IMG/VR virus record: IMGVR_UViG_3300047560_000921
Location: 1-64,000 of that record
DNA: 64,000 bases
Strand: one strand, 5' to 3'
Shown here: one piece after another, positions 789-4,684 of the stretch
Position numbering within the stretch: the first letter of the stretch is position 1
Layout: the number at the start of each line of letters is the position of its first letter
Made by a program: the position numbers and the translations under genes
The notes under the pieces: model-generated
What the model saw: only the letters and a program-made list of their open reading frames with translations
What the model was told of the DNA's origin: nothing
Databases searched by the model: none

Positions 789-947
789 TTAAGCCTTTTC
801 AGGAACTTTGTCTGTTTCGATGATTACTTTAATAAAGCGAAGTGCTTTGCGTTGATTGTCAAAAACAAATTCGTCCTGACCCTCGTCTGTGTTTACAACG
901 ACGATGACGCCGTTCTTCGCTTTTCGTACTTCCAATGCTTCGAGCAT
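789..947 (-). CDS. small hypothetical protein (52 aa), not in ORF track
   Basis: MLEALEVRKAKNGVIVVVNTDEGQDEFVFDNQRKALRFIKVIIETDKVPEKA; RBS AAAGGA; directly after a consensus sigma70 promoter. Confidence 0.7.
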   Translation of the reverse strand: MLEALEVRKAKNGVIVVVNTDEGQDEFVFDNQRKALRFIKVIIETDKVPEKA

Positions 948-977
948 AGTGATTCCTTTCGTAAGAAGTGATACTGT

Positions 978-1006
978 ATTATAAATTAAAAGGAATTAAA
1001 TGTCAA
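978..1006 (-). promoter_or_regulatory. early sigma70-type promoter
   Basis: TTGACA-17 nt-TATAAT, perfect consensus. Confidence 0.85.
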
Positions 1007-1245
1007 TCGCCAGTAGACAGCGAAGTCATCAAATGCTCTTGTTCGGTCATGTGTGCTGTTACTGTAATGTAGCCTAGTTGGTGGTAGTACAGGATTTGGT
1101 CTTTAATGTGGGGAGGACAGTTTTTGGATATTTCAATGCTAGCCCTGGGCGTAATTGAAATGCCGTCTGAAAAGGTAAAGCCTTTGTCACCGGGTCGGAG
1201 ACTTACTGTTTTGGTTTTTGGGAATATAAACTTTAACAAATCCAT
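1003..1245 (-). CDS. hypothetical protein (80 aa), probably leaderless early gene
   Basis: ORF track; ATG lies 6 nt after the -10 box. Confidence 0.7.
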   Translation of the reverse strand: MDLLKFIFPKTKTVSLRPGDKGFTFSDGISITPRASIEISKNCPPHIKDQILYYHQLGYITVTAHMTEQEHLMTSLSTGD

Positions 1246-1251
1246 ACCTGC

Positions 1252-1280
1252 ATTATATAACAGGTATGGATTAATGTCAA
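1252..1280 (-). promoter_or_regulatory. early sigma70-type promoter inside a 10-bp inverted repeat
   Basis: TTGACA-17-TATAAT; TCCATACCTG (1241-1250) / CAGGTATGGA (1261-1270) flank the -10 box. Confidence 0.85.
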
Positions 1281-2852
1281 TTACTTTAGCTTGCGAGTCA
1301 TTGCGACTGGCGCTTTTTTGGTTTTGGCCGCTGTAGTTTGCGCTAATTCTGGAGCCAAATCTTGCGCTACGCTACCGGTGTCTGCCTTTTTGGACTTTTT
1401 CTTCTTGTCTCGGATTTCTTTACCGTAGGTAATTTTTGGAGCAACACTTTGAGTATCTGTCCAATTGTATAAGGTGCTGTTAAGTTCAAAATCGCCCCAC
1501 TGTTCACTCATTGCATCGGGACCTTTGATATAAGAGTAAGTGAACGTAGGCTGGTGAATGAACAAGATACCATCGTATGTTTGTCCTGTTTCGTCGCGAC
1601 TTGTTTCCATGTAGTACTTGTAAGTCATTAGGAACCATTGCTTGCGGAATTCTTCTACATCAAAACTACAAGACCTGTCAATTGTTTTTAGCAAGTCATT
1701 GTACATCGACTTATCCATTTTAGGATAAACGTGCATGATCATACCATGAAACATATCCTTAACTGTATTAGGTGTTGCTCCGTTTTTCTTTGCAAATAAC
1801 TTTAGTGCTTGTGACAATGCATTTAAGTTAGCTAGACCAAAGTGCAGTGGACTCTTTCCGTTGTTCCAACCTAAACTTGGTTTAGCTCCTTTAGTAGGCG
1901 GAGTTGCTTGTGTTAGCCAATCGCTACCTTCTTTACCGATGATGTTAAACAACTGTTGGTTAAAGTCTTTATAATATGTTGCTCCATCTCCGTATGTACC
2001 TTTGCCACCGAAGCCTTTAAGTCGAGCACCTTGAGCTTTAACTTCAACTTCCTTGCCGTTAATTTCCATTGGGCTAGGGTTATGCAGTTTATCTTTCTTT
2101 GTTACGCCAGCATTGCCAACGTTCAAGTCGCCCTTACCACGCTTAGTAATGCCTGCTCCTAAGATTAAGAAGAACGCTTCGCCATCACCTGTAGCCGCAG
2201 ATGTTGTACTAGGATAAACACGCATAGTAATCAAACGTGTCTTAATAAAGTCAACAACTGGATTCTTCTTGATCATAATCAAATCATCAATACTACCCTT
2301 ACCTTGTGTTGTAAGTTTCTTAGTGTTAATAATGCCACCACCAGTGTTTGGACGTTCACCAGTAGTGTCTAAACGCATAGCAATAGCTAACTTGTCTTCT
2401 AGTGTACCCGGGGCTTCTACAAACAAGTTAATGATACGCTGATGGTCGTCTGGGCGGTTTACGTCTTTTTCTAGTAGGGCAGGAACAATGTATTCTTCCA
2501 ACATCTTCTTGTTATAGAACGCCCATACTTGGTCAGCACGTTCTGGGTTTACTTGTTTAAGCAAACTTAGCAACTGTAGCTCGTCGGCATTAATAGCTTC
2601 GCCGACTGGAGGCTGTTCAGTTGGCTCTGCCACTGGGGCAGGTTGTACTTGTGCTTGCGGCTCTTGTGCGGCTTGTTGATCTGTTTGTGCTAGCTGTGTT
2701 AAAAACTGGACCATGCTAGCCATAACATTTTGGCTAACATCTCCTGCTTTAACGTCCGTAGCAATTTCTTGTAATTCAGGCTCTAATGCTTGAATTTCTG
2801 CATCTGGCTTAGATGCTTCTGAAATGATGTTAATATATTTTCTAAGACTCAT
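1281..2852 (-). CDS. putative PD-(D/E)xK nuclease-domain protein, possibly virion-internal
   Basis: Likely start ATG 2852 (MSLRKYINIISEA); motif G-E(AFF)...GDL...EVK; TAAATA late box at 2872-2877. Confidence 0.55.
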   Translation of the reverse strand: MSLRKYINIISEASKPDAEIQALEPELQEIATDVKAGDVSQNVMASMVQFLTQLAQTDQQAAQEPQAQVQPAPVAEPTEQPPVGEAINADELQLLSLLKQVNPERADQVWAFYNKKMLEEYIVPALLEKDVNRPDDHQRIINLFVEAPGTLEDKLAIAMRLDTTGERPNTGGGIINTKKLTTQGKGSIDDLIMIKKNPVVDFIKTRLITMRVYPSTTSAATGDGEAFFLILGAGITKRGKGDLNVGNAGVTKKDKLHNPSPMEINGKEVEVKAQGARLKGFGGKGTYGDGATYYKDFNQQLFNIIGKEGSDWLTQATPPTKGAKPSLGWNNGKSPLHFGLANLNALSQALKLFAKKNGATPNTVKDMFHGMIMHVYPKMDKSMYNDLLKTIDRSCSFDVEEFRKQWFLMTYKYYMETSRDETGQTYDGILFIHQPTFTYSYIKGPDAMSEQWGDFELNSTLYNWTDTQSVAPKITYGKEIRDKKKKSKKADTGSVAQDLAPELAQTTAAKTKKAPVAMTRKLK

Positions 2853-2871
2853 GGAAAACCCCGTAATCAAC

Positions 2872-2877
2872 TATTTA
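2872..2877 (-). promoter_or_regulatory. late promoter box TAAATA
   Basis: The same hexamer precedes most structural genes in the window. Confidence 0.6.
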
Positions 2878-2878
2878 G

Positions 2879-3337
2879 TTAACCCAGGGTTGCATCTTCC
2901 ATGCCAGCCACGCGGAGTTTGACAATATTGGTAATTTGCCATTGCTTAGTGTCCAAGCCTTTGATTACGCCCAGGAACTTGTTACGCAATAGTGCAAATT
3001 CGTTTATTAGCTTGCTCAAGCTAACAACTTCCGAGTCGCCGTCTACGTATCTATCCGCATCACGTGAACTTAGTGCCCTGTTGTAGTGTTCAATGAATTT
3101 CTTGAACTTGTCGCTACGCAATTTACGTAGGTCAATGTTAAGGTGCTCCAGGATAGCTTCAATGTCCTGTAGCTGATTAAATCTATGCTCAAAAATGCCG
3201 GGCATTTCCCGGCTTGCAATTTCAACGTTACCACGAAGCCTAATATCAGATTTTGCGTCTGCAATCTCAGCTTCGTAGTACTCTATGCAATTTGCTATTT
3301 GAGTTAAGTCCTGTGTGACTGTATTAAACCAAGTCAT
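2879..3337 (-). CDS. uvsY: UvsY-like recombination mediator
   Basis: Helical 152-aa protein ending 'KQWQITNIVKLRVAGMED'; adjacent to uvsX. Confidence 0.8.
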   Translation of the reverse strand: MTWFNTVTQDLTQIANCIEYYEAEIADAKSDIRLRGNVEIASREMPGIFEHRFNQLQDIEAILEHLNIDLRKLRSDKFKKFIEHYNRALSSRDADRYVDGDSEVVSLSKLINEFALLRNKFLGVIKGLDTKQWQITNIVKLRVAGMEDATLG

Positions 3338-3612
3338 TATTCTTCGTCATCGTAGTCGTCATAGTCTAGCGTATCGCTTTCGAAAGCTTCGTCATCCTCA
3401 TATTCCGAATCCGATTCGCTGTACTCATATAGCTCGTTAAGAGCAGAATCCAAAGTATTGTCTTGGCCGCGCATATCTGCAGAAATGCTTTCTACGTCGC
3501 CGAATTCTTCTGCTGTTCTAAGCATAGACACTGCGGCTTCGAGAGCTTCTTTCTTTTGAATATACGGCTTTAGGGTAAGCCAAAGGTTTACTAAAAATTC
3601 TGGATCATGCAT
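3337..3612 (-). CDS. acidic hypothetical protein (91 aa)
   Basis: ORF coupled between uvsX and uvsY; D/E-rich C-terminus. Confidence 0.75.
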   Translation of the reverse strand: MHDPEFLVNLWLTLKPYIQKKEALEAAVSMLRTAEEFGDVESISADMRGQDNTLDSALNELYEYSESDSEYEDDEAFESDTLDYDDYDDEE

Positions 3613-3613
3613 G

Positions 3614-4684
3614 TTATTCTTCCTCAGTTGAAATTTCCTCGGTATTTATTGCCGGTGCATTTAAATTTCTTAGTGTAAAGTCTGCCATAACTTTGTCAAG
3701 ACTTCCGTTGTCGTTACGTTCCCATGCCTTGCGGAATTGTTTAATAATTTCGCCGTCAATGGTTGTGTAAACCAAACTGTTGCCTTCTTTCTTTAATAGC
3801 TCTTTACCTTCGAACATGTCAACTAAGCCGCTGTAAGGACTCATACCAGTTTCATAAGGAATCTTTACCTGCACACTTTCAAAAGGTTTGGCATAACGTG
3901 TCTTCATGATTTTACATGCTGAACGAATACCTTTAACATCGCTGACTTTGTTACCTTCGTCGTCTTCTTTCAACTTCAGTTTACGCATTGCAACAACGAT
4001 TGAGCTTGCATAGATAAAGCCCTGTCCACCAGAAATTTTATCGTCTGGATCAAACATGTCTTGACTTGCGTATGTGTGGTTAGTTGCAACTAGACCCAAA
4101 TTCAAACTACCAAACATGTTAACACAGTTACGAACAAGTGCTGTAAGTGCTTTAGGCTTGCGACCCATGTCACCTTTCATGTCACCTGCTTCAAACTGAT
4201 TAACGTCAGTTGGTGTCAACAACATACCCAAGCTGTCCAGTACGAATAGTACTTTTGGCCTATCTGCTTCTGGTAGTGTTTTGTATTCCTTAACGAACTC
4301 ACTAATCATTTTAGCGACATCGTCAATCATAGCCATGTTAAGTTTTAGCAACTTAGATTCGCTAGTGTCAACGCCAAGTGCATGTAGCCATGCTTCGTCA
4401 AGGGCGTTTTCAGTGTCAACTAGAACAACATAAATGCCTTGTTCTTGTGCGTGACGAACTAAATTACCGCTGGCAATAAAACTCTTGCCTGCTCCAGATT
4501 CACCTGCTAGTACAGTTACTTTGCCTAGTGGTACTCCGCGATTGAAGTCGCCGCTAATCAAATAGTTCAGTGCATAGTTGCCTGTACTGATCCAATCTGT
4601 AGGATCGTTAAACCCAATACTAAGTCCGTCAATTGACTTAGTCAAGGTTTTGCGAAATTTGCTCGCGTCAAATGGTTTTGTCAT
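3614..4684 (-). CDS. uvsX: RecA-like recombinase UvsX
   Basis: Walker A GESGAGKS, 'VDTENA', 'LDSLG', 'NHTY', 'SGG.GFIYASS'. Confidence 0.93.
   Translation of the reverse strand: MTKPFDASKFRKTLTKSIDGLSIGFNDPTDWISTGNYALNYLISGDFNRGVPLGKVTVLAGESGAGKSFIASGNLVRHAQEQGIYVVLVDTENALDEAWLHALGVDTSESKLLKLNMAMIDDVAKMISEFVKEYKTLPEADRPKVLFVLDSLGMLLTPTDVNQFEAGDMKGDMGRKPKALTALVRNCVNMFGSLNLGLVATNHTYASQDMFDPDDKISGGQGFIYASSIVVAMRKLKLKEDDEGNKVSDVKGIRSACKIMKTRYAKPFESVQVKIPYETGMSPYSGLVDMFEGKELLKKEGNSLVYTTIDGEIIKQFRKAWERNDNGSLDKVMADFTLRNLNAPAINTEEISTEEE

What the first reader, a model, noticed from the sequence alone, without database searches (positions are those of the whole stretch)
952..1280. Early promoters built into hairpins that hide the next gene's RBS or start codon
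Seen: at 1241-1270 a perfect 10-bp inverted repeat flanks the TATAAT box, and its downstream arm (CAGGT-ATG-GA) contains the start codon of the 80-aa ORF. At the next promoter the spacer holds ATTCCTTT (989-996), exactly complementary to the SD region AAAGGAAT (952-959) of the 52-aa ORF. A transcript from the local sigma70 promoter starts inside the loop and lacks the 5' arm, while read-through RNA from upstream (e.g. the late 1281-2852 gene) would fold and occlude initiation. Established: T4 uses the reverse arrangement to silence late genes (soc, e, 49) on early transcripts. Inference: this is an early-on / read-through-off translational timer.
Basis: partly seen in the sequence, partly recalled or inferred. 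Interest (0 to 1): 0.6.

Follow-up and report, generated by a model that had tools for sequence, protein, structure and literature searches.

The report
Early promoter nested in terminator-like hairpin
In an uncultured freshwater jumbo phage, a perfect host-type promoter sits inside a conserved RNA hairpin that can form only on transcripts arriving from the upstream operon, where it probably ends or silences them, while the promoter's own transcript begins at the start codon; the second reported hairpin is not supported.

Summary
Both sequence observations are present as described. Hairpin 1 (1272-1239, minus strand) is a perfect 12-bp inverted repeat, not 10 bp. It wraps the -10 box of a 12/12 sigma-70 promoter. 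It folds at -19.8 kcal/mol (z about -6.5). It is kept in every close relative, with compensatory changes and G.U wobbles that work only in sense-strand RNA.

The ATG of the 80-aa gene lies 6 nt after the -10 box, so it is the predicted +1 and the local mRNA is leaderless. This is one of 11 such promoters in the genome (P = 5e-8). The hairpin also starts 8 nt after the upstream stop codon and carries a U-rich tail that is kept although the codons change, so it looks like an intrinsic terminator. Relatives with a separate canonical terminator lack the wrapping hairpin.

My best reading is a terminator/insulator that also buries the AUG on read-through RNA.

Hairpin 2 (996-989 with 959-952) is exact but statistically unremarkable. 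No relative keeps this pairing. Two relatives bury the AUG with a different helix.

Promoter-in-hairpin masking is supported statistically elsewhere in this genome, at 138.4 kb. This is a new variant of known kinds.

The parts
1281..2852 (-). 523-aa gene of unknown function, last gene of the 91aa-uvsY-523aa block. Its stop codon TAA (1283-1281) directly abuts the -35 box.
   Evidence: ORF list. No Pfam or PHROG hit. Homologs are all 'hypothetical'. The stop-then-TTGACA junction is conserved in all close relatives.
1275..1280 (-). -35 box TTGACA of promoter P1280
   Evidence: 12/12 match, 17-nt spacer. Invariant in relatives.
1252..1257 (-). -10 box TATAAT of P1280, inside the hairpin loop
   Evidence: It is TATAAT or TACAAT in relatives.
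1261..1272 (-). 5' arm of hairpin 1. It lies in the promoter spacer and is absent from the local transcript.
1239..1250 (-). 3' arm of hairpin 1. It contains the ATG (1245-1243) and codon 2.
   Evidence: 95.8% of cells are paired across relatives. Two pairs carry compensatory changes and three carry wobble changes.
1245..1245 (-). Predicted transcription start (7th base after the -10 box), which is the A of the ATG. The mRNA is therefore leaderless.
   Evidence: The 6-nt gap between -10 and ATG is conserved in all WIN-group relatives, and a 5-6-nt gap holds in a wider clade. Not mapped experimentally.
1224..1238 (-). U-rich tail after the stem, lying in codons 3-7 of the 80-aa gene
   Evidence: Tail score -4.24 counted from 1241, just after the GGA of the 3' arm; only 0.5% of genomic 15-mers score as low. 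U-richness is kept in L001, L002, L003 and L230 although the encoded residues differ.
1003..1245 (-). 80-aa gene, a conserved small protein of unknown function
   Evidence: Protein alignment A3. 80 IMG/VR loci carry homologs.
1001..1006 (-). -35 box TTGACA of promoter P1006. It overlaps the TGA stop of the 80-aa gene.
978..983 (-). -10 box TATAAT of P1006. The predicted +1 is near 971.
989..996 (-). ATTCCTTT in the P1006 spacer, the proposed 5' arm of hairpin 2
   Evidence: Exact complement of 959-952. Found only in this genome. No covariation.
952..959 (-). AAAGGAAT, the SD region of the 52-aa gene and the proposed 3' arm of hairpin 2
   Evidence: The SD core AAAGGA is invariant in relatives while the partner is not.
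789..947 (-). 52-aa gene with a normal SD-led start
   Evidence: 30 nt between -10 and ATG, SD present.
3643..3649 (-). ATAAATA late-promoter-like motif, 37 nt before the 91-aa gene. It is a likely source of transcripts that run into hairpin 1.
   Evidence: 24 of 31 genomic copies lie within 60 nt upstream of a gene start. Conserved in L001-L005.
2871..2878 (-). CTAAATAG, a 7-of-8 late-like motif flanked by a small covarying inverted repeat, ending 18 nt before the 523-aa gene
   Evidence: Identical in all relatives. The flanks are TTAAC/GTTGA here and ATCAGC/GCTGAT in L004.

Best explanation
Hairpin 1 is an RNA stem-loop on the gene strand, wrapped around the -10 box and +1 of a consensus sigma-70 (early-type) promoter. 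The DNA is double-stranded when RNA polymerase binds there. The local transcript starts at or next to the A of the ATG, lacks the 5' arm, and is a leaderless mRNA for the 80-aa gene.

The hairpin can form only on RNA arriving from the upstream 91aa-uvsY-523aa block, which carries late-type motifs. On that RNA it most likely acts as an intrinsic terminator. It has a 12-13 bp stem, an 8-nt loop in the RNA fold and a U-rich tail, and it starts 8 nt after the stop codon. This would insulate the early-gene cluster from foreign transcription. Any RNA that reads through has its SD-less AUG buried in the stem, so translation is off as well.

Shown: the anatomy, the conservation, the covariation, the strand asymmetry, the leaderless spacing and the tail statistics. 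Inferred: the transcription start site, actual termination, timing and translational effect.

Hairpin 2 is most likely a lineage-specific, possibly fortuitous, 8-bp complement.
For: Structure and conservation:
- z is about -6.5.
- Across WIN, L001/L003, L002 and L004, 95.8% of cells are paired against 17-42% when partners are slid. There are 2 compensatory pairs (C-G to U-A, A-U to G-C) and 3 wobble changes.
- L230 adds a third compensation (U-A to G-C) that accommodates a changed codon 2.
- L002 folds at -19.9 kcal/mol on the sense strand and -9.7 on the antisense strand. The constraint is therefore on RNA of the gene strand, not on a DNA palindrome.

Terminator features:
- Tail scores are -4.24 (window), -4.21, -4.41, -3.54 and -5.84 (L230 has seven U). 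Only 0.5% of genomic 15-mers reach -4.24.
- Residues 2-6 differ between relatives while U-richness stays.
- The stop codon abuts the -35 box, so there is no room for a separate terminator.

Natural experiments:
- L237 has a canonical GC-rich UUCG-loop terminator with U6 between stop and promoter, and no significant wrapping hairpin. Its sister L231 has no separate terminator and an 11-bp wrapping hairpin.
- L071 has a -15.6 kcal/mol upstream terminator and no wrapping hairpin.
- In L028/L038/L043 the 80-aa gene is absent. The first promoter after the 523-aa gene is again wrapped, by an unrelated 11-bp repeat that ends at about +1 and cannot touch the SD or AUG.
- A twin exists in the same genome at 185,158: a 13-bp stem with the -10 box in a 10-nt loop and a U6 tail, with the start codon outside the hairpin. 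It is conserved in L209.

Leaderless class: 11 of 47 strong promoters have an ORF-opening ATG 5-8 nt after the -10 box, against 1.2 expected, P = 5e-8.
Against: - No RNA 5' or 3' ends are available. The only possible RNA run gave sparse contigs.
- L004/L005/L238 and L231 keep the hairpin with poor U tails (scores about -2.2). This fits masking or RNA stabilisation better than termination.
- The 10-nt DNA loop (8 nt in the RNA fold) is at the upper end for terminators.
- Codon 2 is Phe (TTT/TTC) in 7 of 10 distant homologs, so part of the U-richness after the AUG could be a protein trait.
- Distant lineages in which tRNA genes follow the promoter have no hairpin at all.
- This phage group does use non-terminator masking helices: the promoter at 138,429, and P2 in L002 and L004.
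Confidence: 0.5

Rival explanations
1. The hairpin does not terminate transcription. It only sequesters the start codon on read-through RNA, so the 80-aa protein is made only from P1280 transcripts (a translational timer).
For: - The AUG lies in the 3' arm in every lineage that has the hairpin.
- L004/L005/L238 and L231 keep the stem without a good U tail.
- Weak AUG-containing helices recur in 8 of 12 more distant leaderless homolog contexts.
- Non-terminator promoter-TIR helices are real in this phage group. The promoter at 138,429 folds at -26.8 kcal/mol, z -4.5. Lineage-specific pairing there has permutation p = 0.0018.
- P2 in L002 and L004 buries the AUG (z -3.6 and -3.3).
- The T4 precedent is genes e, soc, 49 and I-TevI (PMC3014915).
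Against: - The AUG has no SD and is predicted to be leaderless. It should be nearly silent when internal, so a 12-bp stem is more than masking needs.
- For a -10-wrapping stem on a leaderless promoter, the AUG must fall in the 3' arm by geometry.
- The significant U tails, the L237/L231 and L071 contrasts, the L028 hairpin that avoids the TIR, and the twin at 185,158 all point to termination.
Confidence: 0.25
2. The hairpin is a 3'-end protector or processing site for the upstream operon mRNA (an exonuclease barrier or an RNase III-type target) rather than a terminator or a translational mask.
For: - It sits 8 nt after the stop codon of the last gene of the block.
- It is conserved as sense-strand RNA.
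- It persists in lineages with weak U tails.
Against: - Nothing specific supports it, and there is no Rfam or other match.
- It does not explain the U-tail significance.
- It does not explain why a separate canonical terminator replaces the hairpin in L237.
Confidence: 0.08
3. The palindrome acts in DNA, as an operator for a dimeric regulator that shuts off P1280, or as a cruciform.
For: - A perfect inverted repeat is centred on the -10 box.
- The main early-promoter family of this genome also has a palindromic spacer.
Against: - L002 keeps pairing only through three G.U wobbles. Its sense fold is -19.9 kcal/mol and its antisense fold -9.7.
- The half-sites change by compensatory pairs, and the loop length varies from 9 to 10 nt.
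- No two hairpin-bearing promoters share arm sequences.
Confidence: 0.05
4. Hairpin 2 (996-989 with 959-952) is a functional SD mask on read-through RNA.
For: - The complement is exact over 8 nt.
- The 76-nt fold gives -12.8 kcal/mol, z -2.25, with 7 of 200 shuffles as good.
- Only 1 of 46 other promoters pairs as well with this leader.
- L002 and L004/L005 have a different, stronger helix that buries the AUG of the same gene.
Against: - The local helix has z -1.6, with 13 of 200 shuffles as good.
- Across 6 distinct sequences, 60% of cells are paired against 48-56% in slid controls, with zero compensatory changes.
- The closest relatives L001, L003 and L012 show no structure (z +0.5).
- The TCC in the spacer is part of the promoter-family consensus.
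Confidence: 0.2

Closest known systems
T4 genes e, soc, 49 and I-TevI: RBS/AUG-sequestering hairpins with an internal promoter (PMC3014915)
   Same: A promoter lies inside the sequence that encodes the 5' arm or loop. Transcripts from it lack the 5' arm, and longer upstream transcripts fold over the start site. The pairing is conserved in relatives.
   Different: In T4 the internal promoter is a late one (TATAAATA) and the silenced RNA is early. Here the internal promoter is a sigma-70 consensus and the incoming RNA probably comes from late-type motifs. The masked gene here has no SD and is predicted to be leaderless. The hairpin also carries terminator features that the T4 cases lack.
Intrinsic (Rho-independent) terminators, including terminator-promoter cassettes between phage early genes
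   Same: A stem of 12-13 bp with 5 G-C pairs, an 8-nt RNA loop and a U-rich tail partly paired to an upstream A run, placed just after a stop codon. Other terminators of this genome have the same style.
   Different: The -10 box and +1 of the next promoter lie inside the loop and 3' arm rather than downstream of the terminator. The U tail is coding sequence.
Leaderless mRNAs (for example lambda cI from PRM; reported in jumbo phages phiKZ and AR9, PMC8244752 and PMC5312081, seen only as search hits and not read)
   Same: The AUG sits at the predicted +1 with no SD.
   Different: Here it is a whole class of about 10 early genes behind consensus promoters in a T4-related jumbo phage. At this locus it is combined with a promoter-wrapping hairpin.

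Membership tests
Sigma-70-type promoter | TTGACA and TATAAT hexamers 16-18 nt apart | tested here: met
   12/12 match with a 17-nt spacer at both P1280 and P1006. The boxes and spacing are conserved in relatives.
Sigma-70-type promoter | Transcription start mapped 6-9 nt after the -10 box | not testable with these tools
   No RNA reads were usable.
Intrinsic terminator | Stable stem with G-C pairs and a short loop on the transcribed strand | tested here: met
   -19.8 kcal/mol, 13 pairs and an 8-nt loop in the RNA fold.
Intrinsic terminator | U-rich tract directly after the stem | tested here: inconclusive
   Tail score -4.24 here (top 0.5% of the genome). Similar scores (-3.54 to -5.84) in L001, L002, L003 and L230, but about -2.2 in L004 and L231.
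Intrinsic terminator | Transcript 3' ends in the U tract | not testable with these tools
   Only contigs are available, and they cannot show RNA ends.
T4-type read-through-specific TIR-masking hairpin | SD and/or AUG paired in the long transcript, with the 5' arm upstream of the internal promoter's start | tested here: met
   Met for hairpin 1 by prediction: the AUG is in the 3' arm and the 5' arm is in the spacer. Hairpin 2 is formally met but weak.
T4-type read-through-specific TIR-masking hairpin | Pairing conserved, with compensation, in relatives | tested here: met
   Met for hairpin 1 (plus L230). NOT met for hairpin 2.
T4-type read-through-specific TIR-masking hairpin | Translation is reduced on long transcripts and restored when the 5' arm is removed | not testable with these tools
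   This needs reporter or toeprint assays.
Leaderless mRNA | AUG at the transcript 5' end with no SD | tested here: inconclusive
   The 6-nt gap between -10 and ATG puts the A at the predicted +1. There is no SD at a usable distance. The spacing is conserved and the class is enriched (P = 5e-8). The start site itself is not mapped.
N4-type hairpin promoters (virion RNA polymerase) | Short 5-7 bp DNA hairpin with a 3-nt loop as the promoter itself, and no sigma-70 boxes | tested here: not met
   The stem is 12 bp and the loop 10 nt. Perfect sigma-70 boxes are present. The pairing is RNA-type with G.U wobbles.

The most novel reading that the evidence does not exclude
In this clade of freshwater jumbo phages a set of early genes would be 'promoter-gated'. 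Each is leaderless, so it is translatable only from its own promoter's transcript. Hairpins wrapped around those promoters terminate and also silence RNA that arrives from neighbouring, differently timed operons. Together this would form a general transcript-identity insulation system, with turnover between separate terminators, promoter-wrapping terminators and pure TIR masks.
Probability: 0.3. Interest if true: 0.65.

Novelty: new variant of a known kind. Interest (0 to 1): 0.5.

Why it matters
The locus shows how a very large, uncultured T4-related phage packs regulatory signals. A consensus host promoter, the end of the preceding operon and the start codon of the next gene share 42 bp.

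If the reading is right, three things follow:
- It gives a compact natural terminator-promoter-leaderless-start module.
- It extends the T4 read-through-specific hairpin principle to host-type promoters.
- It points to unexpectedly common leaderless early genes in such phages, which affects gene calling and start-site annotation in metagenomic phage genomes.

Tried and rejected
- Close relatives among deposited phages: none found by DNA or by the 523-aa protein. UvsX places the genome near the CBB/GAP32/Atu_ph07-type jumbo phages at about 60-70% identity.
- PHROG and Pfam scans of the 523-, 80-, 52- and 144-aa proteins: no hits.
- Rfam: nothing relevant.
- Reads: the genome comes from a freshwater metagenome. 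One run labelled metatranscriptomic holds identical but sparse contigs (509-953, 2055-2692, 3360-3638, depth about 4). These say nothing about RNA ends.
- Genome-wide duplex test of promoter (-40..-1) against leader (+1..+40): only a mild excess (13 against 7.6 at -12 kcal/mol or lower; p = 0.015). The test splits hairpin 1 at its +1, so it is unsuitable for that hairpin.
- I first took T runs upstream of the promoter in L051, L052, L067 and similar loci for terminators. They are the coding end of a membrane protein gene, so that correlation was dropped.
- A -10-wrapping helix seen by eye at the in-window leaderless promoter 19241 is not significant (z +0.44).
- The T4 genome review (PMC150520) is not held.

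Full report
**What the window is.** It is the first 64 kb of a single 231,384-bp contig (41% G+C) laid as G000. It encodes UvsX (3614-4684) and a UvsY-like protein (2879-3337) on the minus strand. UvsX is 61-70% identical to those of CBB, GAP32, XbC2, Phosso and Atu_ph07-type jumbo phages. No deposited phage matches at the DNA level or with the 523-aa protein. The only public runs that hold the stretch are freshwater metagenomes. It is therefore an uncultured jumbo myophage of unknown host.

**The observation.** On the minus strand the 523-aa gene ends with TAA at 1283-1281. TTGACA (1280-1275) follows at once, then a 17-nt spacer, then TATAAT (1257-1252), then 6 nt, then the ATG of the 80-aa ORF (1245). 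The inverted repeat is perfect for 12 bp (1272-1261 with 1250-1239), and the -10 box lies in its 10-nt loop. As RNA it folds at -19.8 kcal/mol, z -6.4 to -6.8. Only three other perfect repeats in the genome are as long, and two of those are plain terminators. The second promoter (1006-978) is also 12/12. Its spacer octamer 996-989 is the exact complement of 959-952. That helix is only -6.6 kcal/mol, z -1.6, and 13 of 200 shuffles fold as well.

**Relatives.**
- Five IMG/VR loci carry the 523-aa homolog at 71-85% identity (L001-L005).
- A pattern scan added L012 and a divergent lineage, L028/L038/L043.
- Contig look-ups added L230-L239.
- Hairpin 1 is present in the window, L001, L003, L012, L002/L236, L004/L005/L238 and L230.
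- On the registered alignment A2, 95.8% of cells pair, against 17-42% when partners are slid. Two pairs carry double changes (C-G to U-A, A-U to G-C). Three pairs in L002 are kept only as G.U or U.G.
- L230 changes a further pair (U-A to G-C) together with codon 2.
- L002 folds at -19.9 kcal/mol on the gene strand and at -9.7 on the opposite strand. Selection therefore acts on sense-strand RNA, not on a DNA palindrome.

**A leaderless start.**
- With the -10 box ending at 1252, the canonical +1 (7th base downstream) is 1245, the A of the ATG.
- No SD lies at a usable distance.
- The 6-nt gap is invariant in the WIN group. A 5-6 nt gap holds in a wider clade of homologs of the 80-aa protein: L050-L053, L067, L069, L071, L072, L090, L096, L097 and L115. 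In still more distant phages the gene has no promoter and is translationally coupled to the gene before it.
- Genome-wide, 47 minus-strand promoters match at 11/12 or better. Their -10-to-ATG distance is bimodal. Eleven have an ATG that opens an ORF of at least 45 codons at 5-8 nt with no SD, against 1.2 expected (P = 5e-8). None has one at 0-4 nt, three at 9-19 nt and 22 at 20-34 nt; those I inspected in that last range carry an SD.
- One of the eleven begins MDYYKVLGI, a typical J-domain N-terminus, which fixes that start codon.
- The 80-aa gene therefore belongs to a leaderless early class. The local transcript starts in the 3' arm, not in the loop. Read-through RNA would carry an internal, SD-less AUG.

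**What enters the hairpin from upstream.** ATAAATA occurs 31 times in the genome, and 24 copies lie within 60 nt upstream of a gene start. This behaves like the T4 late promoter TATAAATA; the analogy is inference. One copy at 3649-3643 precedes the 91-aa gene and is conserved in L001-L005. A 7-of-8 variant, CTAAATAG (2878-2871), ends 18 nt before the 523-aa gene and is identical in all relatives. The 91aa-uvsY-523aa block runs straight into hairpin 1. One caveat is a terminator-like site inside uvsY (3213-3197).

**Terminator or translational mask.**

*Evidence for termination:*
- The stem begins 8 nt after the stop codon, and the stop abuts the -35 box, so a separate terminator has no room.
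- The tail score (d'Aubenton-Carafa form) is -4.24 here. It is -4.21, -4.41, -3.54 and -5.84 in L001, L002, L003 and L230, which has U7. Only 0.5% of genomic 15-mers reach -4.24.
- The encoded residues 2-6 differ between relatives (DLLKF, DSCFT, DYFIS, DSCFK, AFFIT) while U-richness is kept.
- The same design occurs at 185,158: a 13-bp stem, a 10-nt loop holding the -10 box and a U6 tail. The start codon lies outside the hairpin and the upstream stop is 8 nt before the -35 box. It is conserved in L209.
- In L237 a canonical GC-rich UUCG-loop terminator with U6 stands between the stop codon and a leaderless promoter, and no significant wrapping hairpin exists. In its sister L231, with the same downstream gene, there is no separate terminator and an 11-bp wrapping hairpin.
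- L071 likewise has a -15.6 kcal/mol upstream terminator and no wrapping hairpin.
- In L028/L038/L043 the 80-aa gene and its promoter are missing. The next promoter is wrapped by an unrelated perfect 11-bp repeat that ends near +1 and cannot reach the SD or AUG.

*Evidence for masking:*
- L004/L005/L238 and L231 keep the stem with poor tails (about -2.2).
- Weak AUG-containing helices recur in 8 of 12 distant leaderless contexts.
- This phage group clearly uses non-terminator masks (see the 86-aa gene below).

*Weighing the two:*
- The two functions are not exclusive.
- For a leaderless promoter, any -10-wrapping stem must contain the AUG.
- I rank a terminator/insulator with masking as a by-product at 0.5, and pure masking at 0.25.

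**Hairpin 2.**
- In a gapless alignment of six distinct sequences, the SD core AAAGGA is invariant but the spacer octamer is not: TTTAATAT in L001/L003, TATCATTT in L002, TGCTTAAT in L004, TTCAATAT in L012.
- 60% of cells pair, against 48-56% in slid controls, with no compensatory change.
- The TCC of the spacer also belongs to the consensus spacer of this genome's main promoter family.
- L002 and L004/L005 have a different and significant helix (-14.3 kcal/mol, z -3.6; -17.7, z -3.3). In it the 3' end of the spacer plus the -10 box pairs with the AUG and the first codons of the same 52-aa gene.
- The closest relatives L001, L003 and L012 show nothing (z +0.5).
- The specific pairing reported is therefore unsupported. 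Masking at this promoter remains an open possibility at about 0.2.

**The concept elsewhere in the genome.** At 138,429, outside the window, a promoter lies downstream of an endolysin-like gene and upstream of an 86-aa gene that matches a family annotated as transcriptional regulator (phrog_639). The -35 box and spacer there pair with the SD and AUG (-26.8 kcal/mol, z -4.5). Among 40 non-redundant relatives, native promoter-TIR duplexes at -14 kcal/mol or lower number 11 against 5.0 expected, with permutation p = 0.0018. Different lineages use unrelated arms; examples are 11-bp perfect matches in L159 and L192 and anti-SD CCTCC spacers in L136-L138.

**Comparison with known systems.** T4 genes e, soc, 49 and I-TevI have the same logic with late promoters (PMC3014915). 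Intrinsic terminators and leaderless mRNAs are each well known. What is unusual here is their superposition on one 42-bp element, and the size of the leaderless class. I file the finding as a new variant of known kinds.

Noticed in passing
Genome-wide; in the window at 1245 and 19206 (minus strand): Eleven of 47 strong sigma-70-type promoters have an ORF-opening ATG 5-8 nt after the -10 box and no SD, against 1.2 expected (P = 5e-8). This is a class of predicted leaderless early genes and includes a DnaJ-like protein at 178,407.
   Followed up: partly
Genome 71-72 kb, 115-119 kb and 218-227 kb (outside the window); the family consensus also shapes the spacers at 1280 and 1006: About 20 early promoters share one cassette, TTGACA-ATAAATCCAATTTATTG-TATAAT. 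Its spacer is itself a 9-bp palindrome (ACAATAAAT / ATTTATTGT with a 3-nt loop). It could be a binding site for a dimeric factor, or a duplicated cassette.
   Followed up: no
Window 3649, 10357, 16213, 17728, 28882, 35724, 44176, 52299 (minus strand) and 62869 (plus strand), among others: ATAAATA behaves as a late-promoter-like motif. 24 of its 31 genomic copies lie 12-39 nt upstream of a gene start.
   Followed up: partly
Window 2866-2883 (minus strand): CTAAATAG before the 523-aa gene is identical in all relatives. It sits in the loop of a small stem that covaries (TTAAC/GTTGA here, ATCAGC/GCTGAT in L004). This is a late-type motif in a hairpin loop, as in T4.
   Followed up: partly
L125 (genome 138,355-138,445, minus strand): A long helix pairs the -35 box and spacer of a promoter with the SD and AUG of an 86-aa regulator-like gene. 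Unrelated arms do the same job in many IMG/VR lineages.
   Followed up: yes
L126 (genome 185,115-185,150, minus strand): A 13-bp perfect repeat has the -10 box in a 10-nt loop and a U6 tail. It lies between a 397-aa gene and the clamp-loader gene, and is the twin of hairpin 1.
   Followed up: partly
L127 (genome about 148,230-148,272, minus strand): A TAGAAT -10 box overlaps an ATAAATA late motif inside a 12-bp bulged hairpin that ends 3 nt before the ATG of a 547-aa gene (-18.5 kcal/mol, z -4.0).
   Followed up: no
L128 (genome 123,549-123,580, minus strand): A 10-bp perfect repeat has the -35 box TTGACA in its loop (-15.6 kcal/mol, z -4.3). It is followed by U-rich sequence and then the -10 box.
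   Followed up: no
L028, L038, L043 against window 1003-1280: A related lineage lacks the 80-aa gene together with its promoter and hairpin as one unit. Other lineages have a 154-158-aa leaderless gene or tRNA genes at the same junction.
   Followed up: partly
Window 3197-3213 (minus strand): A terminator-like GC stem plus AUUUUUG lies inside the uvsY-like ORF. It could limit read-through towards hairpin 1.
   Followed up: no
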